Positions 35,628 through 58,201 of a stretch of DNA of 64,000 nucleotides are shown in pieces (the stretch's first letter is position 1; each line of letters starts with the position of its first letter). Where the stretch lies: positions 248,001-312,000 of IMG/VR virus record IMGVR_UViG_3300027749_002876; one strand, 5' to 3'. A program made the position numbers and the translations under genes. The notes beneath the pieces were generated by a model. The model made no database searches. It saw only the letters and a program-made list of their open reading frames with translations, and had not been told where the DNA came from.

Positions 35628-38099
35628 TTAATTTCCTAACTTATATTGTTGGTTAACCATTTCTTGATGTTTGGTATCACTACCACCAGTCAACCCACGT
35701 AGTAATCTAACATTGTCAACTGTTTGTTGATTCTTATATACTTCTTTTATTTCATAAAATGATGCATCTTTTAAAACAAAAGAATAAGCATTGAATCCAG
35801 TAGGTACACTAGCTATTAATGCAATGTCAATATTACCTGCTAATTCATTTGGCAACACATTTCTATTCACTGAGCTTGTGGGTTGAGTTATATTGTTTTG
35901 CATTAACTCAAATCGTTGTTGCATTATTATTTCTGATAATGGATTACCTGCTTTACCTATTCCACTAAAACTAGACATTTGATACTGATGTGTTTCAACT
36001 TCATATTGTATTGAATCTAATTTAGGTTGATATATTGGTGCTTGCTGTGGTAACATTGACACAGTACCAGAACTAGACAGTACTACAGGATTATAAGCAA
36101 ACAAATTACGGGTAACTACTATACCGGTGCCACTATTAGATTGTTGCTGAGTTTCAACCTCTAGTGTGGTAGGTGGTTTTAATATAACAACTTGTGTTGA
36201 TTGCGTTTCTTGTTGTAGTACTGGAGGGATATACACAAACTGCGGAGTTTGTATTACATTGATAGAATGTGATAATGCTTGTTGTGAATCCTGTTGTTGT
36301 ACTTGAGGACCTGCTCTACTTCCCTGTTGTTGTGTTTGCATACTATTTTGCGTAGTTTGTTGTTGATTAAATTGTGTTGATGATTGTATACTCGTTTGTG
36401 TTGATTGACTAGCAAATGTAGCGGATGTAGTTGCGCTACTAGCACTCATATCTTGGTTCATACTAACTAAAGCGTTACTAGTAGCTTGTGAACTTTGCAT
36501 TGTATTTTCTAATGTTTTTGCGGCATTAGATACTGCGACATTTTGTGTAGCTTTATCTTTATCTTGTGAAGATTTAACGACACTCATTGCTAACTTACTA
36601 GGGCCAGCGCCGCCACCTGATTGTTGTTGATTTGATGATCCGGATGCTTGAGTTTGTGCTGGACCACCTGCAGGTCCGGGTGATCCTGTTGGTGCAGGTT
36701 GTGATGGATCTGATTGTGCCACTGCTGTTTGCTGATTTGAATCTTGTGGTGGACTTGATTGTTGCTGTTGTTGCTGTTGCGATTGTTGTTGAGTTTGTTC
36801 TGGTTGTGTATTACCCTGATTTTGATCTAGTTGTCCAGTATTAGCAGACATTGAGGTTCCACCTGAGGATACAATAGCACCTGAGGCACTAGCAACTGTT
36901 GATCCTAATAACATATTCTTAGCAAACGCAACAGCATATCCAGAACACGATGCATTATACAATGGATTAGATACACACGGATCTGCTGTATAGACTAAAC
37001 TTGCTGAAAAATTACCTACAGATGATCCTGTACCTGAAGTGTTGCCAGTAAGGCTTACTCTGCCTAACGATATTTGATTCAAACTAGTTGGCAACAAATA
37101 CTGTCCACTTACTGATCCACTAGTTCCATCACCGGATAATGTATTACTTTTTGAATATATTGTTTGATTATTACTATTAGTAAGTCGTGCCGTAGCACTT
37201 ACTTGGGCTGGAATATTCATATACCAACTACAAGAACCATCTTGGTTAGTAGCTGTACAACCGTACCAACTTTGTCCTACATTGTAATCAAAACCATAAT
37301 TAAAGCCGTGTACAGTAGCACCAATACCGCCGTTCTTTAATGCTGTATTGATAGCAAATGATTGATTTACAGCACTACCCCATACATTACTATTGAAAAG
37401 ATTGTCACCGGTCGCAACTGTACTAAACTTAGGACAAGTTGTACTATAAGCAGGATTGAGGGCACATGGATCAACACGATATTTTAAACTGAAGCTGACA
37501 TTATAAATTTCAGGACCATAGTTTCCAGCCCAGAAGTTTGTATCTCTACCTACAAATCCTACTTGTGCGTTAGTATAATTTGATGCGGCAACTGGGTTAG
37601 CAAATGTTTCACTGAAGTTAAAGTTAGTCCAGTTATATTTTCTATTGGTTTGGTTTGTATAATCATAGTTAGCCATTAGACCCGAACTGCCATATAACTT
37701 AACATAAGCGGCTAGGTAATCTTGTTGGCCGTTATCCCACCCATTGCCGTTCTTGGCTGTAAACCCAAAGTTGAATCCACTAAGTTGTACACCATTACCG
37801 CCGGCAGCCAATGCTTTGTTTATGTTAACCACTTGATTTAAATCTACTTGGCCATAAGAATAGTTAATATATCCTCCGGGTCTAACACTGGGGTTTGGCC
37901 CGCAATTGCCTGCACCACCGGCACCAAAACATACTTGATTAACATAGACGCCATTATTCCAAGTGCTGGTTGTATCCGTAGCAGAATTACCGTAATTTAT
38001 TAAATTACCGGTAGTACTATCTACTTGACTATTACTTGAAAGCGTTATGAATGAGAACGCCAAGCAAAGCGCCAAAGCCAACTTTCTTGTAAGTGTCAT
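35628..38099 (-). CDS. large secreted protein, two beta-rich domains plus Q/S/T-rich region
   Basis: signal-like N-terminus; two DPC..NP.Y...C motifs; poly-Q tracts. Confidence 0.7.
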   Translation of the reverse strand: MTLTRKLALALCLAFSFITLSSNSQVDSTTGNLINYGNSATDTTSTWNNGVYVNQVCFGAGGAGNCGPNPSVRPGGYINYSYGQVDLNQVVNINKALAAGGNGVQLSGFNFGFTAKNGNGWDNGQQDYLAAYVKLYGSSGLMANYDYTNQTNRKYNWTNFNFSETFANPVAASNYTNAQVGFVGRDTNFWAGNYGPEIYNVSFSLKYRVDPCALNPAYSTTCPKFSTVATGDNLFNSNVWGSAVNQSFAINTALKNGGIGATVHGFNYGFDYNVGQSWYGCTATNQDGSCSWYMNIPAQVSATARLTNSNNQTIYSKSNTLSGDGTSGSVSGQYLLPTSLNQISLGRVSLTGNTSGTGSSVGNFSASLVYTADPCVSNPLYNASCSGYAVAFAKNMLLGSTVASASGAIVSSGGTSMSANTGQLDQNQGNTQPEQTQQQSQQQQQQQSSPPQDSNQQTAVAQSDPSQPAPTGSPGPAGGPAQTQASGSSNQQQSGGGAGPSKLAMSVVKSSQDKDKATQNVAVSNAAKTLENTMQSSQATSNALVSMNQDMSASSATTSATFASQSTQTSIQSSTQFNQQQTTQNSMQTQQQGSRAGPQVQQQDSQQALSHSINVIQTPQFVYIPPVLQQETQSTQVVILKPPTTLEVETQQQSNSGTGIVVTRNLFAYNPVVLSSSGTVSMLPQQAPIYQPKLDSIQYEVETHQYQMSSFSGIGKAGNPLSEIIMQQRFELMQNNITQPTSSVNRNVLPNELAGNIDIALIASVPTGFNAYSFVLKDASFYEIKEVYKNQQTVDNVRLLRGLTGGSDTKHQEMVNQQYKLGN

Positions 38100-39423
38100 C
38101 TATTTCTTCCTTTTGAAGTTTTGGTAACTTATCTGGATTTGCTTCCCAAGCTGCCTTAGCTTGTTCACCGATCTTACCTTCGTATGGGCAAGGGGTACCT
38201 GCAGCCAACATAGCATCAAATACTCTTCGGTCTTGACACATGGTAGCAACAGCGGCTACTTTCATACCCATGTCATATAGTGTTTTAGATAACTTTAATC
38301 GTTCACAATTTAAATCACGACTAGTACTACCTGCACCAACACCAAATATTTGTGTTTGAATACTACCACTTGTACCAGTACTACATAAATCAGCATTACC
38401 ACCACTCATCATTGCTGGAGCCACCGCAGTTGGTGGAGGTTGAATAACTTTCTGTGTGACCACACTTTCGTTTTTATTAATATTAGTCACTTCACCGCTG
38501 TTAATGTTTTGATTGACATTAGCATTTTGATTAACATTAGTGCTTGTACTAGTATTGTTGTTGTTATTTGTCATAGTACCGTTGTTGGTATTTTGATTAA
38601 TGTTAGTCATTGTACCACTATTGATGTTAGTGTTTGTGTTACTTGTTGTAGCCGTAGTGTTATTGATATTACGGTTAGTCATATCACCGGTATTAACATT
38701 GTTATTAGTATTTGTACTTGTGCTAGTGTTAACATTGTTGTTATTGTTAGTCATTGTACCATATTGATAATTTGTGTTAGTACTTGTGCTAACGTTATTG
38801 TTGTTATTAGTATTAGTGCTTGTGCTAACATTATTGTTATTGTAAGTCATTGTACCACTATTAATATTGTTATTTGTATTAACTGATGTACTTGCTGATG
38901 TACTGTTATTATTATTGTTAAACGTTTGAGTTCCGCTGTTTACATTATTGTTAGTATTAACATTGGTGCTCGAACTAGTGCTGGTATTAACATTGTTATT
39001 GTTGTTGGTCATAGTACCAGTATTAACGTTGTTATTGTTAAACGTTTGTGTTCCACTGTTGACGTTGTTATTATTGTTTGTATAGGTAACACTACCACTC
39101 ATAACGTTGTTATTGTTATTGTTGTTGGTCATTGTGCCACTGTTAACATTGTTATTGTTGTTGGTGTTAGTTGTGCCACCTGTTAAGTTGGTATTATTGT
39201 TATTAGTAATAGTTCCGCTGTTAACATTGTTAGTGTTAACTGTACTTACACTATTACTGGTACTGTTAGTATCAACCAAAGATTTACTATCATAAGTACC
39301 CTGATTAATAACCGTACTTGTTCCGGTAGTTGTTCCACCAGTAGAACCTGATGTAGTAGTAGTTTGTGCTTGCGTAGTGAATGCCATACCCAGCATGGCA
39401 ACTATAGCGAGAATCTTTTTCAT
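38032..39423 (-). CDS. secreted Asn/Thr-rich repeat protein with Cys-containing C-terminal domain
   Basis: signal peptide MKKILAIVAMLGMAFTTQA; repeated NNNNVNSGTMT; four Cys in C-terminal domain; hydrophobic tail. Confidence 0.75.
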   Translation of the reverse strand: MKKILAIVAMLGMAFTTQAQTTTTSGSTGGTTTGTSTVINQGTYDSKSLVDTNSTSNSVSTVNTNNVNSGTITNNNNTNLTGGTTNTNNNNNVNSGTMTNNNNNNNVMSGSVTYTNNNNNVNSGTQTFNNNNVNTGTMTNNNNNVNTSTSSSTNVNTNNNVNSGTQTFNNNNNSTSASTSVNTNNNINSGTMTYNNNNVSTSTNTNNNNNVSTSTNTNYQYGTMTNNNNNVNTSTSTNTNNNVNTGDMTNRNINNTTATTSNTNTNINSGTMTNINQNTNNGTMTNNNNNTSTSTNVNQNANVNQNINSGEVTNINKNESVVTQKVIQPPPTAVAPAMMSGGNADLCSTGTSGSIQTQIFGVGAGSTSRDLNCERLKLSKTLYDMGMKVAAVATMCQDRRVFDAMLAAGTPCPYEGKIGEQAKAAWEANPDKLPKLQKEEIDDTYKKVGFGALLGVLIHNAFK

Positions 39424-39494
39424 TTTTATTATCATCCTCTAGAGATAATATTTATTTGTTTTTTAGTTGAGAAATATCAAGCTTTATTAAATAG

Positions 39495-39532: not shown

Positions 39533-40471
39533 TTATATACTATAATTTGAGGCGGCTAGTGCATATCTAGCAGTACCAACACCAGTAACGTCATTAGCAA
39601 CTACACCGGTGTTTGATACTAGGTTAGTTATTGCTGTTACACTTGCAGGTGAAAGTATCCTTCCATATCCAAATATTGCAGTATCTAAACCATAACCTGC
39701 GGCTGCTAGAATATATCTAGCGGTACCAACACCAGATGTATTAGTTGCAACTACACCTGTATTTGATACTTTATTGGTTATTGAAACATTTGGATTTCCA
39801 CCATAACCAAAAATAGCTTTATCTGTGCCATAAGTTGCGGCTGCTAATTGAGTTCTGGCAGTACCAACACCTGCAGTATCAGTAGCAACTACACCGGTAT
39901 TACTTACTAGATTGGTTATTGAAACTGGACCAACTGCGCCGTCTTCTCCAAATCCAAAAATTGCTTTATCTGTACCATAACCTGCGGCTGCTAGTGCATA
40001 TCTAGCAGTACCAACACCGGAAACGTCGGTGGAGACTACACCTGTGTTACTTACTAGGTTAGTTACTGCTGAGTAGGAGTAGGTATATCCATATCCAAAT
40101 ATAGCTTTATCAGTACCATAACCTGCCGCTCCTAGTTGACTTCTAGCAGTCCCTACTCCCGTAGTATCTGTAGCAACTACCCCTGTATTACTTACTAAAT
40201 TGGTCATTGATACAAGTCCGGAGTTGTTAAATCCATATCCAAATAGTGCTTTATCAGTACCATAGCCCGCTGCCGCTAGTTCATCTCTAGCAGTACCGAC
40301 TCCTGTTGTATCGGTTGCAACAACCCCAGTGTTACTTACTAGATTAGTTATTGATATATATGATGGGCTGGAATATCCATATCCAAAGATTGCTTTATAA
40401 GAGGGTGGGGGAGGTGCTGTAATTGCAAATCCACCACTGAAATTTACACCTGAAAAAATTATGTCTGCCAT
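39533..40471 (-). CDS. six-repeat Kelch-like beta-propeller protein, copy 6
   Basis: same architecture; GATAAATA at 40491-40498 and AAGGA RBS. Confidence 0.8.
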   Translation of the reverse strand: MADIIFSGVNFSGGFAITAPPPPSYKAIFGYGYSSPSYISITNLVSNTGVVATDTTGVGTARDELAAAGYGTDKALFGYGFNNSGLVSMTNLVSNTGVVATDTTGVGTARSQLGAAGYGTDKAIFGYGYTYSYSAVTNLVSNTGVVSTDVSGVGTARYALAAAGYGTDKAIFGFGEDGAVGPVSITNLVSNTGVVATDTAGVGTARTQLAAATYGTDKAIFGYGGNPNVSITNKVSNTGVVATNTSGVGTARYILAAAGYGLDTAIFGYGRILSPASVTAITNLVSNTGVVANDVTGVGTARYALAASNYSI

Positions 40472-40502: not shown

Positions 40503-40528
40503 AGAATAGGCTCCGAAGAGCCTATTCT
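40503..40528 (-). terminator. terminator of tmRNA locus, AGGCTC/GAGCCT family
   Basis: AGAATAGGCTC-TTCG-GAGCCTATTCT on minus strand plus T-run. Confidence 0.8.
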
Positions 40529-40529
40529 G

Positions 40530-40870
40530 CTATTTTCTGTTACGAGGGATAACTCCCCTAGCTGCCTTTATCAGGCCGCAATGCTAAACTGTGAGTCGTT
40601 TGCGGTTACTTTTTTTGCTTCTACGACCGGGTTGCCCCAATCCTACGGCTTCTGCTTTGCCGAGCTGTCCACTCTGTTACTTGTTGCCCTGTCGAAACTT
40701 TTCAGGCCCATCATAAAAAGAATATTAAAAAAACCAAAATAATAACACTCAATATTCCACATGTATATTGATATTTTACTTCAGGATCCATATTGTCTCC
40801 TTATGGTGGACCTGGGGAGATTCGCACTCCCGTCCAGAACACCTTTCCCGTTACTTCATACAGCAATAAC
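40530..40870 (-). ncRNA. ssrA: circularly permuted (two-piece) tmRNA
   Basis: Acceptor piece ends GACGGGAGTGCGAATCTCCCCAGGTCCACCA (3' end 40804). Coding piece starts GGGCCTGAAAAGTTTCGAC (40709). Acceptor stem GGGCCTG/CAGGTCC has G3:U70. Tag frame 40603-40568 reads ANDSQFSIAA then TGA TAA. Outer ends approximate. Confidence 0.92.
40711..40791 (-). CDS. 26-aa hydrophobic peptide encoded in the tmRNA intervening segment
   Basis: TAAGGAG-5nt-ATG; MDPEVKYQYTCGILSVIILVFLIFFL; ends 1 nt before the coding-piece 5' G. Confidence 0.6.
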   Translation of the reverse strand: MDPEVKYQYTCGILSVIILVFLIFFL

Positions 40871-40871
40871 T

Positions 40872-43800
40872 TCAATTGTATTTAGCATTGAAATACTTTT
40901 TTAACCAAGGCCAATCATAACTTAGACGCAATTTGCCTAACTCACCATTGACTTGTTCAACATATTCTACAGCATGTTTTGCACCATCGATACTATATTG
41001 GGCATAGTCACCCTCACCCACAGTTGACCATATCTTTAATCGTTGTTTGCTATCAGGACTATCATCTAGTTTTAACTTGATAACTTCACGGAAACTGGTA
41101 CGCCATGTACTAAATTCATCAGTGTTATATCGTGCTACACCCGAATTAATCTCTACAACTTCATGCTCATTGTCTAATGTAAAGTCCAAACCTTTACCCA
41201 TATTACTTAACGTAATCTGTTTATGGTATGCAATCATAGCTTGGTGACCATACACTAATCCATTTACAGGGTTACTTGCGTAGAAGATATAATGTTTAGG
41301 TATCTGTAATCTATCTGGTTGCCATGTAAAATCAAATTTACTATTGATACGTAACTTAGCAAACACTGTAAACATCCAAGGTGTTTCACTAGCTGTTGCG
41401 GCTGCATGATAAGCCTGAACACGACCATTTACACCATCAACACGAACAACACGATTAGGCAATCCTTTAGTCACGTTTAGTAAGTGTTCATAGTTCTCAT
41501 CAGCTCCAACTTCACCGTTGCTAAGGAAAACTATATCCAGTGGCTTAGACTGTATTAGTTTATCAGCTTTACTGATGTATGGATAATCATACAACTCTTT
41601 CTTAACATATTCTTTAGCTTCTTTCGGCACAATAATACGTGTGCCACCGGTAGTAGTAATTAATATGTTTTTAGATTCTTTAGACCATAAACTTATTGGT
41701 TCATTGTCAACAACTTTTATTTCTTTGTTGTCTTCCGTGACAAACGTAGCATAAGGCCAATTAAAATCAGTATTAGTAATAGAGACATGTGTATCGCTTT
41801 CAGTTATAAAGTTTGGAGCAGGTAAACGCTTTACTCTTTGATGTTGGTTAAAGTTAATTTTCTCAATTTTTTCTAAATTATCTAATTCTTCTATCAGCAT
41901 ACGTAATTTATTGACATTGATAAAGAATGTATCACCAAACTTTTGCAAGTTACTAGGGAATACATGCAATTGTTCCAGTGAAAACGGATCACATATGTAT
42001 GTAAAATCAAAATTAGTATAGTCACATATAGAACTACATACCCAAACATAATGTTCTTTTTTAATACCTAACTCATACAACATATTTTTTAATGTAGTTA
42101 GGTAATCATTATCATATTTAATAACTTCAACATTCTTTTTAGTTTTATTTTCTAATAATGATGTAATATTATCAGTAGTATCATTACCGTAATCAATCAA
42201 ATAAACGTCATACAAGCAGTTACTAGCGACCGCTCGCTTTGTTTTTACAAAGTTAAGATTACTTAAATGTTCTATAATTTTAATATGTTTAGTATCTTCT
42301 ATGAATGTTTCTTTATTGACCATAAAGGTAGTTCCCCAATGGCTCCATTGTGTTCCAAATATATGAACCATTTTCATTTGCCATGGGCTAGGATAATAGT
42401 CAAATGTAAAATTTGTATAATCTAATTCACTATTCAGTATCCAACATACTTCAGTTTCAGACTTGTTAAGACAACGATTAATAGTATCAACCCAGCTATT
42501 TAAATAACGTGTTTTTTGTATTTTTGGATAGCGTTGTTTTAATTCTTCGAATCTTTGTTGGCTTTCATTGTTGTTCTTATCAACAAAAAACATTGATAGG
42601 TTACTGTCGATTTCCACTGTTTGTTCTTCAACATAGTTAAATTCTCTATGACCCATAGTGTATAATGGTCCGTTAACATAATAAGTTTGTGTGTTCTTAC
42701 TATATTCGTTACCAAATACATTTATGTGCCTAAAGTTTTCACTATTTGGTCTCCAGTTAAAATCAAATTTATCATAATTTAAGTCAGGGTTGATGACCCA
42801 AAATACTTCATCCGGATGTTCTGCAATCAAATCCTCAAGTGTTGTTTTAAGTTTATAACGATTAACTGTATTACGGTTTGTAGTAATTGTAGTTTCTGTT
42901 CGTTCCATCAACACAACTTCAGTTGCGCCTGGCACAGTGTATCTAGGACCATTATCTGCCCACTGGTAAATTTGAGGAGGACTATGTGGATTAGGTCTCC
43001 AACTAAAATCAAATGTATTGTAATCGTCTACATTACTCACATGCCAATTTTTTAATTCTGGTTTAGTAATAGCAACAATGCTTTTAACATATTTTCGTTC
43101 TGATGCCCCATAAGTCCAATATTCTACTGTAGGTTCTACTGTAGCGTCATTCCATTTGTTACCAAAAACATATACATATGGTGGACTTTTGGGATCAGGT
43201 CTCCATGAATAATCAAAATTGTCAACAGGTATTACTACTAGCCACTTGTTCATATCAGGTAATGTAGTTGCTACTACATCATCCATATATTTAAATTCAG
43301 TAGCACCTGGACAAGTGTAAGTGATAGTAGGTTCACGTACAGCATCGTTATATTTGTTACCCCATACATAGATATACGCAGGTTCACGCGGATCAGGTCT
43401 CCAGCTAAAATCAAATGAAGATTTATCAACTGGTATAAGAGTTTCCCATCTATTAAGCTGTGGCTTTACATCAACTATACCTACATATTTGCGTTCTGTT
43501 GCACCTGGTACATGATATTCTAATGTAGGTTCTACTTCTGCCGGAACATATTTGTTTCCCCATGTATATATGTAGGGTTTTTCAGTCTCATCGGGATGCC
43601 AACTAAGTTGGTCTTCTACTACAGCCTGATGTATAACCCAATTATCCTTTGTAGGCAGTGCTTTTGCTCTGGTTGCGTCAATATATTTTACAGCACTGTT
43701 CTCATTTACACCGTCTGCATAATATACAGGGCCGCCCGTCTTTTGCCATTGTGTTCCAAATTTATATATGTATGGTATATCTTCGATATCAGGATGCCAA

Positions 43801-45215
43801 CTAAAATCAAACTCGGATGTGTCAATACTATCCGGTGTGAACCAACTTGCCATGATATTATGTTCGGGCATTATCCAATTTTTCATATTAGGTAATGCTT
43901 TTGCTTTGACCTCATCAACATATTTTACATGACTATATTCATTTGCACCTTCAGAATAATAAATAGGTCCGCCTATCTTTTGCCATTGTGTTCCAAACTG
44001 ATACTTATATGGTCTATCTTCAATGCCGGGGTGCCAACTAAAATCAAATTCAGATACATCCACACCATCAGGGATAGACCAATTAGTCATGTTTGATAAT
44101 GCTTTAGCTACAGGGTAATCAATATATTTTACATCTGTTGCATTGTTGACAACATAGCGAGGACCACCTGCTTTACTCCATTGGTCGGGGAATTGATATA
44201 TAAAATCAGGTTCATTTGGTTTTGGTTCCCAACTATAATCAAAAGTAGATGCATCAATATATGAAGGTACTATCCAATTATCTTTAAACTGTTTACGTGT
44301 TAATCGGTATTCATCTATATATTTGTATTGTGTTGCACCTTCAACAGTGTATGTTGCAGAAATCTTATCTTCTGCTTTAGTCCATTGATTACCCCATGCA
44401 TAGATAAATGCGGGTTCACGTGGATCTGGTCTCCAACTAAAGTCAAATTCATTTTTGTCTATATCATCAGCAATGACCCAACGATCCCATTTGGGTTCTA
44501 GTGCTACTTCATCTGTCATATATTTTATAATAGAAGAACCTTCAGTATGATATTCCAATACACTTTTAACTTCTACTGGGAAGAATTTGCAACCCCAATG
44601 ATAAATGAATGCAGGTTCACGTGGATCTGGTCTCCAACTAAAGTCAAATTTGTTCTTGTCTATATCATCAGTAATAACCCAACGATCCCATTTGGGTTCT
44701 AGTGCTACTTCATCTGTCATATATTTTATATTGATAGCACCGGGCACACGATATTCTATTACATTTTTAACTTCTACTGGGAAGAATTTGCAACCCCAAT
44801 GATAAATGAATGGCGGATCAGTTGGATCAGGATGCCATGAAAAATCAAATTTAGTTTCATCAATTAAATCATGTAAGATCCATCTATCATTTTTTTCGTT
44901 GTGTCTAAGTACTGGTTGTACATCAGCACGATAAATTGTTAATGGTAATTTATTATCAGCATTACACAACCATGTGCCGCTGTCTTTCTGATGTTGACTT
45001 GGCCAAATATTATCATGTTCATATGCCCATACATCTTCATCCGGCAAGAATTCAAAATCAAAATCCCAATCAAAATTTCGATAATCACAGTACTCGTTGA
45101 TTATCCAAAAATGTTCTGTTGTGGCTTGTTTTCTGGCCTCGGCTAGATTACGTGCTTGTTTTTCTCTGGGGTGGGCGTTTGGTTTATTACCAAAATAAAA
45201 TACATCTCTTAGCAT
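40872..45215 (-). CDS. 1447-aa repeat protein with degenerate glycosyltransferase-like C-terminal domains
   Basis: about ten ~67-aa repeats FDFSW(H/R)PDPxEPxYIYxWG...YxVPGATExKY; C-terminus similar to 57248..58201 protein. Confidence 0.7.
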   Translation of the reverse strand: MLRDVFYFGNKPNAHPREKQARNLAEARKQATTEHFWIINEYCDYRNFDWDFDFEFLPDEDVWAYEHDNIWPSQHQKDSGTWLCNADNKLPLTIYRADVQPVLRHNEKNDRWILHDLIDETKFDFSWHPDPTDPPFIYHWGCKFFPVEVKNVIEYRVPGAINIKYMTDEVALEPKWDRWVITDDIDKNKFDFSWRPDPREPAFIYHWGCKFFPVEVKSVLEYHTEGSSIIKYMTDEVALEPKWDRWVIADDIDKNEFDFSWRPDPREPAFIYAWGNQWTKAEDKISATYTVEGATQYKYIDEYRLTRKQFKDNWIVPSYIDASTFDYSWEPKPNEPDFIYQFPDQWSKAGGPRYVVNNATDVKYIDYPVAKALSNMTNWSIPDGVDVSEFDFSWHPGIEDRPYKYQFGTQWQKIGGPIYYSEGANEYSHVKYVDEVKAKALPNMKNWIMPEHNIMASWFTPDSIDTSEFDFSWHPDIEDIPYIYKFGTQWQKTGGPVYYADGVNENSAVKYIDATRAKALPTKDNWVIHQAVVEDQLSWHPDETEKPYIYTWGNKYVPAEVEPTLEYHVPGATERKYVGIVDVKPQLNRWETLIPVDKSSFDFSWRPDPREPAYIYVWGNKYNDAVREPTITYTCPGATEFKYMDDVVATTLPDMNKWLVVIPVDNFDYSWRPDPKSPPYVYVFGNKWNDATVEPTVEYWTYGASERKYVKSIVAITKPELKNWHVSNVDDYNTFDFSWRPNPHSPPQIYQWADNGPRYTVPGATEVVLMERTETTITTNRNTVNRYKLKTTLEDLIAEHPDEVFWVINPDLNYDKFDFNWRPNSENFRHINVFGNEYSKNTQTYYVNGPLYTMGHREFNYVEEQTVEIDSNLSMFFVDKNNNESQQRFEELKQRYPKIQKTRYLNSWVDTINRCLNKSETEVCWILNSELDYTNFTFDYYPSPWQMKMVHIFGTQWSHWGTTFMVNKETFIEDTKHIKIIEHLSNLNFVKTKRAVASNCLYDVYLIDYGNDTTDNITSLLENKTKKNVEVIKYDNDYLTTLKNMLYELGIKKEHYVWVCSSICDYTNFDFTYICDPFSLEQLHVFPSNLQKFGDTFFINVNKLRMLIEELDNLEKIEKINFNQHQRVKRLPAPNFITESDTHVSITNTDFNWPYATFVTEDNKEIKVVDNEPISLWSKESKNILITTTGGTRIIVPKEAKEYVKKELYDYPYISKADKLIQSKPLDIVFLSNGEVGADENYEHLLNVTKGLPNRVVRVDGVNGRVQAYHAAATASETPWMFTVFAKLRINSKFDFTWQPDRLQIPKHYIFYASNPVNGLVYGHQAMIAYHKQITLSNMGKGLDFTLDNEHEVVEINSGVARYNTDEFSTWRTSFREVIKLKLDDSPDSKQRLKIWSTVGEGDYAQYSIDGAKHAVEYVEQVNGELGKLRLSYDWPWLKKYFNAKYN
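44405..44810. repeat. recent tandem duplication, 201-nt period
   Basis: TGGATCTGGTCTCCAACTAAAGTCAAATT at 44421 and 44622; near-identical 67-aa units. Confidence 0.85.
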
Positions 45216-45301: not shown

Positions 45302-46396
45302 ATGCCTAAAAAGCATTTATCAATAACAGGAACACGCATGAGCAGAACACAATTTGAATTTACACCAGGAAAACCAATTAGAACATACGGAGCCAATGGC
45401 TCATGGAGAGATTGGAGCACCGATGAACTTGTGGGGGCAAAATTAAATTATCTATCAGGTTGGAAATGTGGTGCAGGCGTTGATAGCTTATTCATCGATA
45501 TGGATGGTGGTGTATGGACAGCTAGTTGTCGTGTAGGTGGCAAATTAGGTAGTGTTTGGGATGACTTTTCAGTTCCGGAAGATTGGATTGATTGTACTAA
45601 AAATGTATGTAGTTGCGGTGCTGACTTGTTTATCCCAAAAACTAGTCTTGTTGAATTCAAGCCATTACTACGAAAAGGACAAGAATTGCCAACTCAGGGT
45701 GAAATGTTAAATGAACAACTAACTGAGTTTGTAGGTATGGAACGAACACACGCTAGTACTCAAAAACAAATATATTGGGAAATAGGTCGTAGATGTAATT
45801 ATGATTGTAGTTATTGCTGGCCTTGGATACATAACAATACTGACCCACACAAGCCATTGGAAGATTTAATGAGAGCTACTCATTTGATTGAGAAAAAATT
45901 CACCAAAGGTGAAAGCGTTAACTTCATTATTAGTGGTGGTGAACCCACTGTTAATAAAGATTTCTTAGATTGGTTACGTTATTTAAATGCATGCGGACAT
46001 CATGTGAGCTTGCATAGTAATGGTAGTCGATTGCCTGACTATTACAAAGAAGTTATACATTACGGTGATTTGAACTTGAGTGTTCATTATGAGTTCTATA
46101 ACAGAGAAAAGTTTGTTAAAGTGGTTGAGGCTATTGCAAAAGAAAAATCAGAACACGGTGGTTGTGGTCACTTAGAAGTTAAGTTTATGATGGCTCCGCA
46201 CAACCGTGATGAGACATTGAGCTTAGAAGCTGAATTAAAAGAATTACCTCACTTTGTAGATTACTGCACCTGGGCTATTGTTCCTATACGAGGAGACATG
46301 AATAACAAAATCAGTTCACCTGATACCGGTTCAGGCAGTGAAGTTATGGAAGGCTACACTAAGGAAGATTACATTTTATTCGGAGATCGTAAATAA
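45302..46396 (+). CDS. radical SAM enzyme with N-terminal SPASM-like domain
   Basis: CNYDCSYC, SGGEPT, SNGSR; N-terminal WKC...C...CTKNVCSC. Confidence 0.9.
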   Translation: MPKKHLSITGTRMSRTQFEFTPGKPIRTYGANGSWRDWSTDELVGAKLNYLSGWKCGAGVDSLFIDMDGGVWTASCRVGGKLGSVWDDFSVPEDWIDCTKNVCSCGADLFIPKTSLVEFKPLLRKGQELPTQGEMLNEQLTEFVGMERTHASTQKQIYWEIGRRCNYDCSYCWPWIHNNTDPHKPLEDLMRATHLIEKKFTKGESVNFIISGGEPTVNKDFLDWLRYLNACGHHVSLHSNGSRLPDYYKEVIHYGDLNLSVHYEFYNREKFVKVVEAIAKEKSEHGGCGHLEVKFMMAPHNRDETLSLEAELKELPHFVDYCTWAIVPIRGDMNNKISSPDTGSGSEVMEGYTKEDYILFGDRK

Positions 46397-46397
46397 T

Positions 46398-48320
46398 ATG
46401 GAAAAAGACGAATGGATGGTAGAAACGTTAATACCAAGAAACACCGGTATACGCAAGAAGCCTAACATACAAGCTGTAACATATTTTAATGCTACTAGAA
46501 AAACTAAATTAGTACTAGCTGTAATGGGGTGCTGGGCTATTTGGATGCCACCATATAACTTAGGAAGACTAGCTTCATTAACTAGATCATCCGGATATGC
46601 AACAAAATGTTTTGATTTCAATGTTCAAAGTTATCACGACTTTAGAGAAATGTATCCTGGTTCTGATTTAGAGGATGCTTGGGGTACAGGTAATTGGTGG
46701 TGGTGGAAAGAACGTTATTTTGACAAAATACATGAAAGAAACATTCCACTACTAGAAAAATATGTGGATGAAATATTAGCAGAAGATCCGGATATTGTAG
46801 GATTAAGTTTATACTTTACTAACAGATTGCCGTCAGAGTGGGTAGCTAATGAAATTAAAAGACGTAGACCAAGTGTACTAATTATATTTGGTGGACCTGA
46901 ATGCCATTCAGAAGATTACGTTCCGCCCGAATCGGTCGACCACTGGTTTACGGGAGAATCTGAACAATTACTATTAGATTTTTTAGAGAAATACGAAACG
47001 GGTGAGAAGATTACTGAACGTCATTTGGGCAGTTTATATAGTTCTACTAGAATTGATATTGATAGTTTACCCTTCCCCGACTATTCTGATTTTGACTTTT
47101 CTAAGTATTTAGGACATTTATCAATTAATACTGAAATCAGCAGAGGGTGTATTGCTAAATGTAGCTTTTGTTCCGAAACATATTATTGGAAATATAGAGA
47201 TAGAGAAGCACATTCAATATTAGATGAGATAGAGCACCAAGTAAAAACCAACGAAATTGTTGCTGTTTCATTTGTTGATAGTTTAGTCAATGGCAATCTA
47301 AAAAGTCTCAAAGGTTTTGCTGAAGGATTAATTGATCGTAAATTAAACATTAGATGGTGGGGATATGCCAGATGTGATGGACGTATGGATGGTGCTTACT
47401 TTGATTTGCTTCGTGCTAGCGGTTGTGACGGATTCAGTTACGGAGTAGAAAGCGGTAGCCAAAAAGTATTAGACTTAATGCAGAAAAAAGTTAAAGTATC
47501 TGATATTAATGAAAATCTATATCATTCAGGTAGAGTGGGAATGACAGCTAATGCTAATTGGATTATCGGTGCGCCCGGAGAAGATATTGAGGCATTAGCG
47601 CATAGTATGAACCTTATTTGGAATCATAGAAATAATATACATTCAATTAGTCCAGGCAATGGTTTAGGTGACACGTTGGGTACTGACTATGATAATAGAG
47701 AAAAATACAACATAAACCCTCGTAACAAACCTTTCTTAGGACATTGGTACTCATTAGACTGGACTAATACTCAATTAAACAGATACATTAGAATGAAACT
47801 ATTTGTTATTCTTTTAAAGATAGCAAAAGATCATGGAGTGATTGTTAATCTTAATGGTGACAAAGGTATAACCTCACATTACGATTTAAAATTTGATGAT
47901 GACAATTATATTGTTGATAATATTGAATATGAGAATTTTGAATACCATCTATTAAAAACTGGTTACGGTTTTTTTGCTGACACCGTTGTGAATGAAGTAT
48001 TTTCTTTGTTCAGAATATTGTGGAGAATTAAAGGTGGTTTTGAAATTACGCTAAACTTTGAGCAAGAGGTTGATGTTGAGGCATTTGGTGGATTATTAAC
48101 TCATACACCACATACTTATAATGCAACACATTATTTCAAAATAGATAAAGAGGGTAATTTTCAATCTAATAATACATATGAGTTTTTTTATGAACCAGAA
48201 TCTTGGGATAGAATTGAGAATAAGAGTTTTAAATATGAAGGTAATGTTTCAGGTTATTGGGGTGAAGTAAAGATTGCTCCTGTGAAACGTCACATATGGA
48301 TAGAGAACAATATAAATTAA
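46398..48320 (+). CDS. cobalamin-binding (class B-type) radical SAM enzyme
   Basis: PPYNLGRL, DIVGLS, IIFGGPE, GESE, LPFPDY, SRGCIAKCSFC, GVESGSQKVL; start moved to MEKDEW (GGAG RBS). Confidence 0.9.
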   Translation: MEKDEWMVETLIPRNTGIRKKPNIQAVTYFNATRKTKLVLAVMGCWAIWMPPYNLGRLASLTRSSGYATKCFDFNVQSYHDFREMYPGSDLEDAWGTGNWWWWKERYFDKIHERNIPLLEKYVDEILAEDPDIVGLSLYFTNRLPSEWVANEIKRRRPSVLIIFGGPECHSEDYVPPESVDHWFTGESEQLLLDFLEKYETGEKITERHLGSLYSSTRIDIDSLPFPDYSDFDFSKYLGHLSINTEISRGCIAKCSFCSETYYWKYRDREAHSILDEIEHQVKTNEIVAVSFVDSLVNGNLKSLKGFAEGLIDRKLNIRWWGYARCDGRMDGAYFDLLRASGCDGFSYGVESGSQKVLDLMQKKVKVSDINENLYHSGRVGMTANANWIIGAPGEDIEALAHSMNLIWNHRNNIHSISPGNGLGDTLGTDYDNREKYNINPRNKPFLGHWYSLDWTNTQLNRYIRMKLFVILLKIAKDHGVIVNLNGDKGITSHYDLKFDDDNYIVDNIEYENFEYHLLKTGYGFFADTVVNEVFSLFRILWRIKGGFEITLNFEQEVDVEAFGGLLTHTPHTYNATHYFKIDKEGNFQSNNTYEFFYEPESWDRIENKSFKYEGNVSGYWGEVKIAPVKRHIWIENNIN

Positions 48321-48330
48321 GGTATATTAA

Positions 48331-49716
48331 ATGAATAACACTAAAACGTTTTGCAACATGGCATGGGATTATCCTATGTTCTTTATGTTTAAAAATGCAG
48401 TAGGTTACTGCTGTAGAACACCTAGAATAGATATTGATAATGAATTACTAGAGGAGATGAAAGAGGACTTTTGGTCTAATCATCCTAGCTTTGTCAATAG
48501 AAGAAAAGAATTAATCAATGGTATAAAAAGTAAAGATTGTGATACCTGTTGGCAATTAGAAGATGCTGGATTTAAAAGCTCTAGGAATGATGACCACTTC
48601 AATATGTTTATGAAGAAAAATTATCCCAATTTTAATGAAAAATTAGACCAGCGTTTATTTAAATTCTTTCCAGGCATTGAACGTAGTAACTATTCAAATG
48701 TAATTGAAATTGTATTGAATAACACATGTGATGCAAAATGTACATATTGTAGTGAACATTATAGTACTCAATGGGTAACTGAAAAAAAGAAGTTTGGTGG
48801 AATAAGTCCGTATTATACTGACATGAATGACAGAAATCCTAGAGCAGAAGAACTGTTCTGGTCATGGTATGAAAACAAAGTATTACATACTAATAAACGT
48901 TTTGGATTCATTGGTGGTGAACCGTTAATTATTGATGCATTATATGAATGTTTTGATAAATTAATTGAAATACATGAAAGAAAACAACTATCAATTCAGT
49001 CTGATGCGGATAAAATGGAACTATGTATTACTAGTAATATGAATACACCTCCTGCATATTTTGAAAAGTTTATGGGGTATGTGAAAAAACTAGAAAAACA
49101 TTTCAGAATTATCATTCAAGTAAGCGGTGAAAACGTAGGTGACGATTTAGAATATATACGACACGGTGTTAAATGGAAACGTTGGTCTAGAAATGTTGAA
49201 TATTTATTAGACAATACTAACATTACGCTAAACTTTTTACCATGCTTAAGCTTGTTAACTATTCCTAGATTTAACGAATACATACAATATGTAAACAAGT
49301 TAAACAAAAAATACGGAGTAATGAAAATACATCAAAACATTGTTACATGGCCAGTAGAACAAAGTCCTATGATAGCTCCTAAAGAATTTTCCCAGTACTT
49401 TGATCCATGCATTGACAGTGTGAATGAAATTCTTGCCGGAGAAATTAAGGATCGATTTATACGAGGTGAATATGAAAACCTATTATTGTGGCTTACAAAA
49501 ACACGTGAAGCTATTATAAGCAATCCAAGTGCAAGTGAACCTGTTGAGAATGCTAAAAAGTTTTATTCTTTTTTTAATGAGTTAGATCGTAGAAGAAATA
49601 CTAGTGTATTGAAAATATTTCCTGAAATAAAAGAATTTTATGACACAGGTAAACAGTTATATGAAGGCACAGTACAACCACGCATTATACCAATTGTAGC
49701 TGTGACAAATGAATAA
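48331..49716 (+). CDS. radical SAM enzyme with N-terminal twitch-like Cys domain
   Basis: FC...YCC...CDTCW; CDAKCTYC; IGGEPL. Confidence 0.88.
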   Translation: MNNTKTFCNMAWDYPMFFMFKNAVGYCCRTPRIDIDNELLEEMKEDFWSNHPSFVNRRKELINGIKSKDCDTCWQLEDAGFKSSRNDDHFNMFMKKNYPNFNEKLDQRLFKFFPGIERSNYSNVIEIVLNNTCDAKCTYCSEHYSTQWVTEKKKFGGISPYYTDMNDRNPRAEELFWSWYENKVLHTNKRFGFIGGEPLIIDALYECFDKLIEIHERKQLSIQSDADKMELCITSNMNTPPAYFEKFMGYVKKLEKHFRIIIQVSGENVGDDLEYIRHGVKWKRWSRNVEYLLDNTNITLNFLPCLSLLTIPRFNEYIQYVNKLNKKYGVMKIHQNIVTWPVEQSPMIAPKEFSQYFDPCIDSVNEILAGEIKDRFIRGEYENLLLWLTKTREAIISNPSASEPVENAKKFYSFFNELDRRRNTSVLKIFPEIKEFYDTGKQLYEGTVQPRIIPIVAVTNE

Positions 49717-52508: not shown

Positions 52509-52512
52509 AAAA

Positions 52513-53187
52513 ATGAATATTACATTTACGTTAGATCCAAACAATAGATCGATATACTATATCAATTTAGAAGTAAGCCCTGAAATACTCGAAGAACTCA
52601 AGCAGGAAAATTGGGTACCTATTACTCCTACTCATTTAGATGAATATTATACAAAACGTCATCGTCTAGATGATGGATACGGAATAAAAGGTTTATTAGT
52701 ACGTAAAGTATACACTTTTATGAGGTCTTCTGAATTTAAAAAAACTATGTTAGACTTGATATGGAAAGATATGACATTTCAACATAAATGGGGTCCTCGT
52801 CTTAACTATGAAAAAATTAACAATTGTACCATTGTTGAATTTGGTTTTGATAAAGATTGTCCTGGATTTAGTACAGACCTTCATTTAGAAAATCGTTGTC
52901 AAATTGCATTTGGTAAGATTTTTTTTGTACCTGAGGATGCGGAAAATAAAAGCTCATATTTTTATAGAACAATAAATCGTGATGATCCTTTAAGAGTCCC
53001 TGTAGGTATGGGACTAGGTTGGCTATGTGTCAATACACATGAAGGTTGGCATGAAGGTTATAACGCTAGTGAGGAAGATAGATATTCATCTAGTATAAAT
53101 TTTACATTTGATATATTTAACAACGGCCATGTAAAAAGCGATGACGCCACTATTAAATATATACGTGGCGAAGCTGCTTCTATTTAA
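52513..53187 (+). CDS. 2OG-Fe(II) oxygenase-like protein
   Basis: DCPGFSTDLHLE, NTHEGWHEG, R-Y-S distal motif; start moved to MNITF after GATAAATA (52500-52507). Confidence 0.55.
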   Translation: MNITFTLDPNNRSIYYINLEVSPEILEELKQENWVPITPTHLDEYYTKRHRLDDGYGIKGLLVRKVYTFMRSSEFKKTMLDLIWKDMTFQHKWGPRLNYEKINNCTIVEFGFDKDCPGFSTDLHLENRCQIAFGKIFFVPEDAENKSSYFYRTINRDDPLRVPVGMGLGWLCVNTHEGWHEGYNASEEDRYSSSINFTFDIFNNGHVKSDDATIKYIRGEAASI

Positions 53188-56307: not shown

Positions 56308-57254
56308 GCTACCTTTGTACTCATTATGTCAAAATTGCAATGGCACATTGTTTTATCACATAGTATTGGATCTTTTGGTACTTCAAAATTCTCAAAAATA
56401 TTCCCAATCTTGTCACCCACTCTACACCATCCTCTATATACATCACCTCTTAGGTCCACAATGATTTGCTCTACACCTGCATAACATTTCCAGCCACTCC
56501 AGTCATTTGTTTTTTGGCTAATAAATCTATGTGCGCTTGATACAATCTCAGTACCATCTTCTTGTACCATCTTCATTGCACCACGATAATAATCAAATGA
56601 TTTGGTGTACTTAATATGTTTAACAATCAATTCATGTTGTTTATCAAATATCTTTTTCTGAAACTCATCGTAGTCATACAATGTATCACCAAAGTCATGT
56701 ATCAATGGTTGTAATGCCATACTGATATTACCTATACCTTTAACTTTGTTTGCTATAGCATAACAAAAGTCAAATTTTTCAGGACTCATCATAATGTTAA
56801 CATGAGTTCTAACATCATTATTGATTAATTTAACTACTTGAACAAAGTGGTCAGCATCAGCAAACTCAGGATGAAAACTTAAACATACGTGGTCAAAGTA
56901 TTGTTTGTTATCTTCCCACCAACGTAACGTTCTACTACCATTACTGATTAATCCAACTTTAGCTCCCAACTCAGTGCAATGTTTGCATATCTCTATAAAA
57001 TGTTTGTATAATGTTACTTCACCACCAGTTAATTCAAAATAAACTTTACGCGGAGCAACTTGTTCTACTACACGTGAAATAAATTCTTTAACTAAATCAA
57101 TTTCAGGCCATTTAATACTACCTGAGTGTAAATTATCCGGACAATAACTACATTCAAAATTACAAGTGTTGCCTAAACACCAGTTAACTACAAACCATTC
57201 TTCATGCTCCGGAGTACTATGTGCTAATTTAATATATTTGTGTTCCATTACCAT
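56304..57254 (-). CDS. radical SAM enzyme with C-terminal SPASM-like domain
   Basis: CNFECSYC, TGGEVT, SNGSR; C-terminal WKC...WC...CDKTMCHC. Confidence 0.9.
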   Translation of the reverse strand: MVMEHKYIKLAHSTPEHEEWFVVNWCLGNTCNFECSYCPDNLHSGSIKWPEIDLVKEFISRVVEQVAPRKVYFELTGGEVTLYKHFIEICKHCTELGAKVGLISNGSRTLRWWEDNKQYFDHVCLSFHPEFADADHFVQVVKLINNDVRTHVNIMMSPEKFDFCYAIANKVKGIGNISMALQPLIHDFGDTLYDYDEFQKKIFDKQHELIVKHIKYTKSFDYYRGAMKMVQEDGTEIVSSAHRFISQKTNDWSGWKCYAGVEQIIVDLRGDVYRGWCRVGDKIGNIFENFEVPKDPILCDKTMCHCNFDIMSTKVA

Positions 57255-58201
57255 CCTTCTATTTTTCTAATAACATCCATCTCTTTAACTAACGGACCGA
57301 TGTTATATTTATCAGCTAGATAATGTCGTTTGAAGAACTTGCTTTGTTCTACATCATGCATACACATTGGTAAACCTAACTTATCATGCAATGCTTCACC
57401 TAACAAGTTTGCTTCTTTTTGTGGATCTCTATGTGAGTGTTCTTCCCATAATACAGTATAGTTATCAAACCATTGTACGTTGGCAGGATCCCATTCAGTT
57501 AACATAGTCATGTATGTGCCTAATCGTGCACCATAGATAGCCCACTCACCGTTCTCTACATCACGACCGATGTTGTGCCAAATTGTTAAGTTGTTTAAAT
57601 TACGACTAGCAACAGTTTCTTTAAATTCATCAATCGTAGGTCTTGCACCACGATTTAAACTCATCTTAACACCTTCACGAAAACCTGCACGCCAAGCTTG
57701 AAAGGGTGTATGATTGGGATATGTTGTACTGTAACAATCATACATAGACCAATATAAGTTATCCTTACTATCTAAGCAAAAGTCAGCAATACGTGATACA
57801 TCTCCATCTTTCTGATTCTCATGTGTTTGCATATTCATTACATAAGTCTTTGTCCAACTACTCATGCCACCATTACCATAACGTAGTCCATTGATACTAT
57901 TAGTTGCCTTCCAACGATATTGTGCTAAATGATAACTAGGGTCTTTATTGGTGAAATCAAATTGCATGTTGAAGAACCTTTCTTCAGGCATATTATCACC
58001 GTCAATTAAAATAAAACGTTCAGTGTCACTTGCCATTGCAGCCGCTTTATGCGCGGCATCACTACCTTTTATATTATCTACTCGTTTAGCCCAAGGAACC
58101 ATGTTCTTAATCTTAAGCCAAAATTCTTCTTTCTGCGGCTCGTCATAACTAAGATAGATGCAATCTAAATCGGCTACATCAATGATATCATTCGAGTTCA
58201 T
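57248..58201 (-). CDS. glycosyltransferase-like protein (GT-A)
   Basis: YLSYDEP, AHKAAA, ILIDGD (DxD), NGLRYGNGG, AWRAGFRE. Confidence 0.65.
   Translation of the reverse strand: MNSNDIIDVADLDCIYLSYDEPQKEEFWLKIKNMVPWAKRVDNIKGSDAAHKAAAMASDTERFILIDGDNMPEERFFNMQFDFTNKDPSYHLAQYRWKATNSINGLRYGNGGMSSWTKTYVMNMQTHENQKDGDVSRIADFCLDSKDNLYWSMYDCYSTTYPNHTPFQAWRAGFREGVKMSLNRGARPTIDEFKETVASRNLNNLTIWHNIGRDVENGEWAIYGARLGTYMTMLTEWDPANVQWFDNYTVLWEEHSHRDPQKEANLLGEALHDKLGLPMCMHDVEQSKFFKRHYLADKYNIGPLVKEMDVIRKIEGW

What the first reader, a model, noticed from the sequence alone, without database searches (positions are those of the whole stretch)
40872..45215. Giant protein built from an expanding Trp/Pro/Tyr-rich repeat and apparently inactivated glycosyltransferase-like domains
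Seen: roughly ten ~67-aa FDFSWxPD repeats including a recent 201-nt duplication, then several units with W(I/V)xNxxxDYxxFDF, and a last domain matching the 57248 protein (AYHAAA vs AHKAAA; NGLVYG vs NGLRYG; TWRTSFRE vs AWRAGFRE) but with FAK where that protein has DGD. Inference: a catalytically altered scaffold or sugar-binding ruler that organises the modification enzymes or sets glycan length.
Basis: partly seen in the sequence, partly recalled or inferred. Interest (0 to 1): 0.6.

Follow-up and report, generated by a model that had tools for sequence, protein, structure and literature searches.

The report
Giant repeat-bearing phage glycosyltransferase-like protein
A 1447-residue protein of an uncultured freshwater jumbo phage joins three glycosyltransferase-fold (GT-A) domains to ten copies of a 67-residue module that is copied from part of that fold and numbers 1 to about 26 in relatives; the family is abundant, unnamed and probably acts in phage-directed sugar-chain assembly.

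Summary
Window 40872-45215 (-) is one 1447-aa ORF. It has ten ~67-aa FDFSWxPD repeats (aa 109-780), a 201-nt tandem duplication at 89.6% identity, three further W..DY..FDF units, and a C-terminal domain homologous to the 57248 protein, with FAK where that protein has DGD.

AlphaFold models with fold searches show three GT-A (nucleotide-diphospho-sugar transferase) folds:

A repeat HMM also matches the strand-loop-strand that follows the DxD position in each of these domains. The repeat is therefore a duplicated GT-A sub-fragment.

FAK is invariant in the giant family; DGD is kept in the stand-alone relatives. "Inactivated" is not shown, for three reasons:
- Domain 868-1000 keeps a near-invariant E-L-D in the DxD register.
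- Other motifs shared with the DGD relatives survive in the C-terminal domain.
- Metal-independent GT-A enzymes without DxD are documented.

Complete relatives carry 1 to about 26 repeats. They lie in glycan-gene islands of ~300-365-kb freshwater phages. No Pfam, NCBIfam, PHROG or PDB sequence match exists.

Most likely this is a glycan-assembly protein with a length-variable binding arm. The ruler idea remains untested.

The parts
40872..45215 (-). Whole ORF, 1447 aa (P0001). Acidic (pI 5.2), with no signal peptide and no hydrophobic segment.
44892..45215 (-). N-terminal cap, aa 1-108. Its start (MLRDVFY..KPN.HPRE) is very conserved, and it holds a first W-strand/FDW.FDF unit.
42876..44891 (-). 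Array of ten ~67-aa all-beta repeats, aa 109-780. Consensus W..x..ID...FDFSWxPDP..P.YIY.WG...Y..GAT..KY, about four strands per unit, model pLDDT 85-92.
44409..44810 (-). Most recent 201-nt tandem duplication inside the array (aa 136-202 versus 203-269): 89.6% nt identity, dS 0.20, dN/dS 0.45.
42615..42875 (-). Transitional unit u11, aa 781-867: a helix followed by a W-strand/FDFNW unit. Matches the repeat HMM at 36.5 bits.
42216..42614 (-). GT-A-like domain 1, aa 868-1000 (beta-alpha-beta-alpha-beta plus two strands). The most conserved part of the protein.
42420..42428 (-). E930-L931-D932, an acidic pair in the DxD register of GT-A-like domain 1. At least 90% conserved in the family, flanked by invariant S929 and Y933.
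   Evidence: register inferred from the W-strand alignment
41868..42215 (-). GT-A-like domain 2, aa 1001-1116: a truncated Rossmann-like half with only the second acidic position (D1065).
41553..41867 (-). Linker and small beta-rich segment, aa 1117-1221. No fold assigned.
40875..41552 (-). Complete C-terminal GT-A domain (aa 1222-1364) followed by a five-helix tail (aa 1365-1447). Homologous to the stand-alone DGD proteins.
41355..41363 (-). F1285-A1286-K1287 at the DxD position of the C-terminal GT-A domain. V, K and L of VFAKL are invariant and A is at least 90% conserved in the family alignment.
57248..58201 (-). Stand-alone paralogue (317 aa) with an intact DGD. More than 80% identical in thousands of metagenomic proteins. 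Co-occurs 11-26 kb from the giant gene in 5 of 5 large related genomes.

Best explanation
P0001 is a soluble, cytoplasmic, multi-domain member of the GT-A (nucleotide-diphospho-sugar transferase) fold superfamily. It is specific to a lineage of uncultured freshwater jumbo phages of about 300-365 kb, whose host is probably a proteobacterium.

Shown: its C-terminal half holds three GT-A-like domains. Its N-terminal half is an array of 67-aa beta modules. These arose by serial duplication of the W-strand / FDFSWxP-loop / next-strand segment that follows the DxD position in those domains.

Inferred: the protein works in the phage's own glycan-assembly pathway. Neighbouring genes in this phage and its relatives include NDP-sugar epimerases/dehydratases, an aminotransferase, many radical SAM enzymes and other glycosyltransferase-like proteins. 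At least one domain still binds a nucleotide sugar and transfers it. The best candidate is aa 868-1000 with E-L-D. The alternative is the C-terminal domain, with Lys1287 taking the place of the metal. The degenerate GT-A units and the repeat array would act as an extended, multivalent arm that holds the acceptor or the growing glycan. The length of that arm is tuned by gain and loss of internal units (1 to about 26 units in relatives).

The target, whether virion proteins or host envelope glycan, is not known.
For: Fold:

Repeat origin:
- An HMM built from 1140 family repeats matches aa 806-866 (36.5 bits), 925-962 (17.5), 1291-1311 (14.6) and 1058-1094 (10.3). The best of 300 shuffles scores 6.2.

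Motifs:
- E930-L931-D932 is at least 90% conserved.
- The C-terminal domain shares S..E, RV, NGLxYG, DF and WR..FRE with the DGD relatives.

Variable arm:
- Protein length = 67.1 x units + 557, r = 0.986.
- Complete members with 1-6 units exist.
- Internal units turn over while terminal units are positional orthologues.

Pathway context:
- Eight radical SAM genes, DegT and an epimerase lie in the window.
- A homologue's locus has three epimerases/dehydratases, a carbamoyltransferase, a GT4, a cytidylyltransferase and a PfkB kinase.
- The DGD domain family is repeatedly fused to GT-B (GT1/GT28-type) glycosyltransferase domains.

Loss of DxD does not imply loss of activity: WrtF; GT14 and bacterial GT6.
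Against: - No activity, ligand or target has been observed.
- No sequence family assignment exists.
- The fold of the repeat itself was never tested in isolation.
- The array's overall shape is uncertain (pTM 0.39).
- A profile comparison of the repeats with the stand-alone paralogue found nothing.
- Gene neighbours of the giant gene are poorly conserved across 80 loci, so the pathway link rests on regional rather than operon-level association.
- COSMC shows that GT-A proteins that lose DxD can be pure chaperones.
Confidence: 0.45

Rival explanations
1. Pure pseudo-enzyme scaffold or molecular ruler. None of the GT-A-like domains is catalytic. The protein recruits the active enzymes of the island or binds the product, and the number of repeats sets glycan length or spacing.
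For: - The canonical DxD is replaced by an invariant FAK, and YGNGG by YGHQA, in the only complete GT-A domain.
- Two domains are truncated.
- Repeat number ranges from 1 to about 26 with a strict 67-aa increment.
- An active-looking DGD paralogue always co-occurs 11-26 kb away.
- COSMC is a precedent for a GT-A pseudo-enzyme acting as a chaperone.
Against: - E-L-D is retained in the DxD register of aa 868-1000.
- The candidate base-bearing FRE helix and other shared motifs are retained in the C-terminal domain, whereas COSMC lost both DxD and xED.
- Metal-independent active GT-A enzymes exist.
- No interaction or length data exist.
Confidence: 0.25
2. Virion structural or decoration protein. 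The GT-fold domains and aromatic-rich repeats are repurposed as lectin-like binding modules that contact host surface glycans. Repeat turnover would then reflect an arms race.
For: - The size is very large, internal repeat birth and death is fast, and the repeats are rich in aromatic residues and proline (W 5.2%, Y 7.0%, P 8.8%).
- Tail-fibre-like genes and a 5889-aa ORF lie 15-20 kb away.
- Vaccinia H3, a virion envelope protein with a GT-A fold, appears among the structural matches.
Against: - The gene is embedded between radical SAM/sugar genes and auxiliary host-like genes, not in the structural module.
- The nucleotide-site-like motifs are strongly conserved.
- No fibre-like coiled coil, beta-helix or chaperone domain was detected.
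- No proteomic data exist.
Confidence: 0.15
3. Sugar-nucleotide-forming enzyme (a nucleotidyltransferase such as IspD, TarI or RmlA) rather than a glycosyltransferase.
For: Many structural matches, especially for aa 1001-1116, are cytidylyl- or uridylyltransferases.
Against: - The two enzyme classes share one fold, so the matches do not discriminate between them.
- The best matches for the complete domain are glycosyltransferases.
- The G-x-G-T-R/K signature of nucleotidyltransferases is not evident at the first strand of any domain.
- The relatives are fused to GT-B transferases.
Confidence: 0.05

Closest known systems
Stand-alone phage 'DGD' GT-A-like proteins (window 57248-58201; Ralstonia jumbo phage RsoM2USA gp348 and gp350). 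All are annotated hypothetical.
   Same: Clear sequence homology with the C-terminal domain (E 9e-8 and 4e-12). The motifs S..E, RV, NGLxYG, DF and WR..FRE are shared. They occur in the same genomes.
   Different: They are 230-320 aa single domains with a conserved DGD and YGNGG. The giant protein has FAK and YGHQA, two extra GT-A-like domains and the repeat array. None is characterised.
WrtF (Rhizobium tropici O-polysaccharide fucosyltransferase) and the SunS/ThuS S-glycosyltransferases
   Different: Only 10% identity, single catalytic domain, no repeats. WrtF keeps the second Asp, whereas the giant protein has Lys there.
COSMC (C1GALT1C1), a GT31 pseudo-glycosyltransferase chaperone
   Same: A GT-A fold protein that lost DxD and acts as a scaffold or chaperone for an active paralogue. 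Here too an active-looking paralogue co-occurs.
   Different: COSMC also lost xED and has a single domain. Here the other motifs are retained, one domain keeps E-L-D, and there is no sequence relation.
Virus-encoded cytoplasmic GT-A glycosyltransferases (PBCV-1 A64R, mimivirus R655/R699, STIV A197, mycobacteriophage Che8 GT)
   Same: Soluble viral GT-A proteins, some multi-domain, that glycosylate virion proteins. They appear as structural matches.
   Different: They have canonical motifs and no array of sub-domain repeats. Identity is 7-12%.
WbdD-type chain-length rulers of O-antigen synthesis (from general knowledge, not tested here)
   Same: The concept only: an extended domain whose length sets glycan length, working with a GT-A polymerase.
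   Different: The WbdD ruler is a coiled coil, not beta repeats. There is no homology and no length data for this protein.

Membership tests
GT-A fold / nucleotide-diphospho-sugar transferase superfamily | Rossmann-like alpha/beta/alpha sandwich with the characteristic strand order | tested here: met
GT-A fold / nucleotide-diphospho-sugar transferase superfamily | DxD (or variant) metal-binding motif at the end of the central strand | tested here: not met
   The complete C-terminal domain has F-A-K, invariant in the family, opposite D-G-D of three relatives. Domain aa 868-1000 has E-L-D in the same register, which is inconclusive for that domain.
GT-A fold / nucleotide-diphospho-sugar transferase superfamily | Catalytic base (xED-like) on the helix after the core sheet | tested here: inconclusive
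   An invariant W-R..F-R-E lies on helix aa 1367-1383 and is shared with the DGD relatives. Its equivalence to xED was not established residue by residue.
Any curated glycosyltransferase sequence family (Pfam, NCBIfam, PHROG) | Score above the family threshold | tested here: not met
   No hit at E <= 1 in Pfam, E <= 0.01 in PHROGs or E <= 0.01 in NCBIfam. No PDB sequence relative.
Glycosyltransferase (functional class) | Transfer of a sugar from an activated donor | not testable with these tools
   Only context is available: sugar-modifying neighbours and fusion of relatives to GT-B domains.
Phage stand-alone DGD-domain family (window 57248 protein / RsoM2USA gp348, gp350) | Sequence homology over the whole domain | tested here: met
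   E 9e-8 over 229 columns. tblastn E 4e-12 to RsoM2USA. Four-way alignment A5.
Phage stand-alone DGD-domain family (window 57248 protein / RsoM2USA gp348, gp350) | Conserved DGD and YGNGG motifs | tested here: not met
   FAK and YGHQA in the giant protein.
COSMC-type pseudo-glycosyltransferase | Loss of both DxD and the catalytic-base motif | tested here: inconclusive
   DxD is lost in the C-terminal domain, but the FRE helix and E-L-D of aa 930-932 are retained.
Glycan chain-length ruler | Length of the extended domain correlates with product length | not testable with these tools
   Only the prerequisite is met: the arm varies from 1 to about 26 units of 67 aa.

The most novel reading that the evidence does not exclude
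The 67-aa module is a new kind of protein repeat, made by excising and serially duplicating the sugar-facing strand-loop-strand of a GT-A domain. It would work as a glycan-binding bead. The array would then be a genetically tunable ruler or processivity arm that sets the length or spacing of a phage-made glycan, and phage lineages would adjust it from 1 to about 26 beads in an arms race with hosts or grazers.
Probability: 0.15. Interest if true: 0.8.

Novelty: new variant of a known kind. Interest (0 to 1): 0.55.

Why it matters
The family is abundant. I found more than 1,500 clusters of full-length proteins at 90% identity, about 600 IMG/VR loci, and exact copies in several freshwater metagenomes. 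It is nevertheless entirely unannotated.

This work assigns the family a fold. It shows that the repeat is a recycled piece of an enzyme domain, which is an unusual route to a repeat protein. It also places the family in the glycan islands of large freshwater phages.

If the arm does bind or measure glycans, it would be a simple, naturally length-graded system for studying how glycosyltransferases control polymer length. It would also help explain how jumbo phages decorate themselves or their hosts.

The analysis further gives a concrete test of whether losing DxD makes a dead enzyme or a metal-independent one: the FAK site against the DGD paralogue in the same genome.

Tried and rejected
- Pfam, PHROGs and NCBIfam scans of the whole protein found nothing.
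- PDB sequence searches with family profiles found nothing meaningful: a PKD domain at E 0.28, and no hit at all for the paralogue profile.
- The ESM Atlas searches, by features and by shape, returned only unnamed viral clusters.
- A profile-profile comparison of the repeats with the stand-alone paralogue showed no similarity. The link between repeats and GT-A therefore rests on the giant protein's own domains.
- Fold searches with the 1140-aa model cannot speak for the repeats, because the GT-A domains fill the lists.
The contigs break inside the repeats, and the many 'joints' have short sides at 90% likeness, so they give no reliable evidence of repeat-number polymorphism. No RNA run holds the gene, so expression is unknown.
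- Literature searches for jumbo phage + radical SAM + glycosyltransferase found nothing. The 'moraphage' and huge-phage papers do not describe this protein.
- A DNA-glycosylation role was considered. It was set aside because the protein is acidic throughout (pI 4.8-7.1 by region) and the nearby thymidylate-synthase homologue is full length and ordinary. It is not excluded.
- No alternative genetic code was used.
Full report
WHAT IS THERE

Window 40872-45215 (-) is a single open frame of 1447 aa (P0001). It lies on a 170,963-bp viral contig. The contig's large terminase is 49-51% identical to those of PA5oct-like and Phosso-like jumbo phages. Near-complete relatives that carry the same gene are 303-364 kb, and one of them has direct terminal repeats. 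An IMG/VR contig of 524,565 bp is 100% identical over the 924 nt compared. Four freshwater metagenome runs hold the gene without mismatch.

The protein is acidic (pI 5.2). It has no signal peptide and no hydrophobic segment.

THE OBSERVATION

- Ten units of about 67 aa carry FDFSWxPD (aa 109-780). Each scores 74-105 bits against a repeat HMM.
- Tandem Repeats Finder reports a 201-nt period with 2.1 copies at 89%. In the best phase the two copies (44610-44810 and 44409-44609) are 89.6% identical, with dS 0.20 and dN/dS 0.45. The duplication is young relative to the other units but not very recent, and it is under moderate constraint.
- Further W..DY..FDF units lie at aa 806-830, 925-941 and 1058-1073, and one at the N-terminus.
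- The last domain aligns with the 57248 protein (E 9e-8), with FAK opposite DGD.

FOLDS

An AlphaFold2 model of aa 1140-1447 (41-sequence alignment, pLDDT 88, pTM 0.84) was searched in several ways.
- Foldseek's best PDB matches are the SunS/ThuS S-glycosyltransferases, RmlT, ArnC and PBCV-1 A64R.
- Against predicted viral structures, the matches are two uncharacterised homologues from uncultured phages, then viral glycosyltransferases including that of mycobacteriophage Che8.

WHAT THE REPEAT IS

In the model each unit is all-beta, with about four strands and pLDDT 85-92. I built an HMM from 1140 repeats of 119 relatives and ran it against the non-repeat parts of P0001. It matches:
- aa 806-866 at 36.5 bits
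- aa 925-962 at 17.5 bits
- aa 1291-1311 at 14.6 bits
- aa 1058-1094 at 10.3 bits

The best of 300 shuffled controls scores 6.2.

In each GT-A-like domain the matched piece is the central W-strand (the strand that ends in DxD in canonical enzymes), the FDFxW.P loop and the next strand. The repeat is thus a sub-fragment of the protein's own GT-A-like domain that has been duplicated serially.

In the family's repeats the position equivalent to the second Asp of DxD (W+7) is Asp in 77% of units, and the first position is Asn or Asp in 54%. A profile comparison with the stand-alone paralogue alone shows nothing. The fold of the isolated repeat could not be searched. This part remains an inference from sequence.

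ACTIVE OR DEAD?

In the complete C-terminal domain the DxD position reads F-A-K. In the 41-sequence alignment V, K and L of VFAKL are invariant, and A is at least 90% conserved. DGD is kept in the window's paralogue and in gp348 and gp350 of Ralstonia phage RsoM2USA. YGNGG is also changed to YGHQA. That is a real and fixed change of the metal site.

Three facts argue against simply calling the protein inactivated.
1. The other motifs shared with the DGD proteins are invariant in the giant family: S..E after strand 1, RV after strand 2, NGLxYG, DF and W-R..F-R-E.
2. Domain aa 868-1000, the most conserved stretch of the protein, has S929 and Y933 invariant and E930-L931-D932 at least 90% conserved, in exactly the register of DGD counted from the W-strand.
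3. Active GT-A enzymes without DxD are documented. WrtF, one of the best structural matches and likewise a GT-A core with a helical C-terminal domain, has GAD and uses neither metal nor basic residues (PMC12595478). GT14 and bacterial GT6 lost DxD independently, and GT14 uses basic side chains instead (PMC7185993).

The same paper describes COSMC, which lost both DxD and xED and is a pure chaperone. Both outcomes therefore have precedent.

FAMILY AND VARIATION

A word-based search found 1506 proteins at E <= 0.001, with lengths 1298-2527 aa among the 120 listed. All are unnamed and sit on contigs of up to 370 kb. N- and C-termini are nearly identical across the family.

Length follows 67.1 x (repeat HMM hits) + 557, with r = 0.986. 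A search with the non-repeat half found shorter members. 68 of the 120 listed have the conserved N-terminus, and these carry 1-6 canonical repeats (824-1167 aa). The array thus ranges from 1 to about 26 units.

Comparison with six close relatives shows that the first unit and the last four are positional orthologues, while internal units are gained and lost. For example, units 4-6 of P0001 all map to one unit of its closest relative.

CONTEXT

Upstream and divergent lie eight radical SAM genes. They include a B12-binding one and two with an N-terminal twitch/SPASM domain. Next come the DGD paralogue and two unnamed genes (window 58544-59299 and 59296-60096) whose N-termini look GT8-like by eye only; Pfam and NCBIfam gave no hit.

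DegT and an NDP-sugar epimerase lie 27 kb downstream. In a Lake-type metagenome homologue the gene is flanked by three epimerases/dehydratases, a radical SAM enzyme, a carbamoyltransferase, a GT4, a cytidylyltransferase and a PfkB kinase.

Across 80 IMG/VR loci the immediate neighbours are variable. The B12 radical SAM gene is present in 21 of 80, and a MoxR ATPase in 37 of 80. The DGD paralogue is present 11-26 kb away in 5 of 5 large genomes examined.

A full HMMER scan with the paralogue found 1139 cluster representatives. Sixteen of the 150 listed carry the domain at about aa 420-670; four of these were scanned and all have a GT-B (GT1/GT28-type) glycosyltransferase domain N-terminal to it, and a shorter fifth protein (444 aa) carries a partial GT28-type match. 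That fusion supports a role of this domain family in glycan assembly.

INTERPRETATION

- Shown: fold, repeat anatomy, fixed loss of DxD in one domain, retention of an acidic pair in another, extreme variation in repeat number, and a regional link to sugar genes.
- Inferred: the protein takes part in phage-directed glycan assembly; at least one site still binds or transfers a nucleotide sugar; the array is a length-variable binding or spacing arm.
- Odds: I put 0.45 on this reading, 0.25 on a wholly non-catalytic scaffold or ruler, 0.15 on a virion or adhesin role (vaccinia H3 is a GT-A-fold virion protein), and 0.05 on a nucleotidyltransferase.

NOVELTY

The fold is known. The sequence family is unnamed and uncharacterised. 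An array built from a sub-domain fragment of a GT-A domain, varying from 1 to about 26 copies, is to my knowledge undescribed. I rate it a new variant of a known kind.

LIMITS

- There are no experimental data and no RNA evidence.
- The repeat fold was not searched alone.
- Residue equivalences to DxD and xED come from sequence register and secondary structure, not from superposed coordinates.
- The tandem duplication is not bridged by the independent contigs.

Noticed in passing
window 40503-40905 (-); also L005, L007, L011, L012, L017, L031, L045: A permuted (two-piece) tmRNA gene lies directly downstream of the giant gene and overlaps its last ~30 nt. Rfam beta_tmRNA scores 95.4 bits (threshold 84) and tmRNA_permuted 98.9 bits (threshold 47). 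ARAGORN gives the tag ANDSQFSIAA. A terminator-like hairpin sits at 40528-40503. The same gene order (tmRNA 0-3.6 kb downstream, same strand) holds in 7 of 7 related loci. This points to a beta- or alphaproteobacterial host.
   Followed up: partly
window 39533-40471, 21735-24637, 28400-31322 (-), and further copies elsewhere in the genome: About a dozen paralogous ~310-aa proteins, each made of six ~48-aa repeats (KAIFGYG...ITNLVSNTGVVATDTTGVGTAR..LAAAGYG). They look propeller-like. The only family hit is an unnamed PHROG.
   Followed up: no
window 45302-57254: Eight radical SAM genes in one 12-kb block of a phage. One is B12-binding (46338-48320). Two are twitch/SPASM types; the one at 53184-54371 scores 300 bits to NF033640. 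Their substrates are unknown.
   Followed up: partly
window 38032-39435 (-) and 35628-38099 (-): Two secreted proteins with signal peptides. One (467 aa) is almost entirely Asn/Thr-rich low-complexity sequence with a Cys-containing C-terminal domain.
   Followed up: no
window 27363-28247, 32654-33928, 33941-34759 (-): Host-like envelope and transport genes in the phage: a Gram-negative porin (Porin_4), a sodium:dicarboxylate symporter and a family-3 solute-binding protein.
   Followed up: no
window 63466-63999 (-), continuing to genome 134368-152037: The last ORF of the window is the end of a 5889-aa ORF of the phage genome. Tail-fibre-like genes lie next to it; the one at 61406-62641 has a weak, sub-threshold Peptidase_G2 match (22.4 bits against a 25-bit cut-off).
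   Followed up: no
G000 versus L004 (IMGVR_UViG_3300027749_002876): The held genome is a 171-kb contig. The identical locus also sits in a 524,565-bp IMG/VR contig, while complete relatives are about 350 kb. One of the two assemblies is likely a fragment and the other possibly a chimera or concatemer.
   Followed up: no
proteins P0424, P0437, P0452, P0488, P0508: The stand-alone DGD domain family recurs as a C-terminal fusion to GT-B (GT1/GT28, EryCIII-like) glycosyltransferase domains in proteins of ~715-810 aa. Other members carry two tandem copies.
   Followed up: partly
window 18301-20933 (-): A MoxR-type AAA ATPase paired with a DUF2201 metallopeptidase/VWA protein. The ATPase is the most frequently conserved neighbour of the giant gene in related loci (37 of 80), which suggests that the 20 kb between them in this phage is an inserted variable island.
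   Followed up: no
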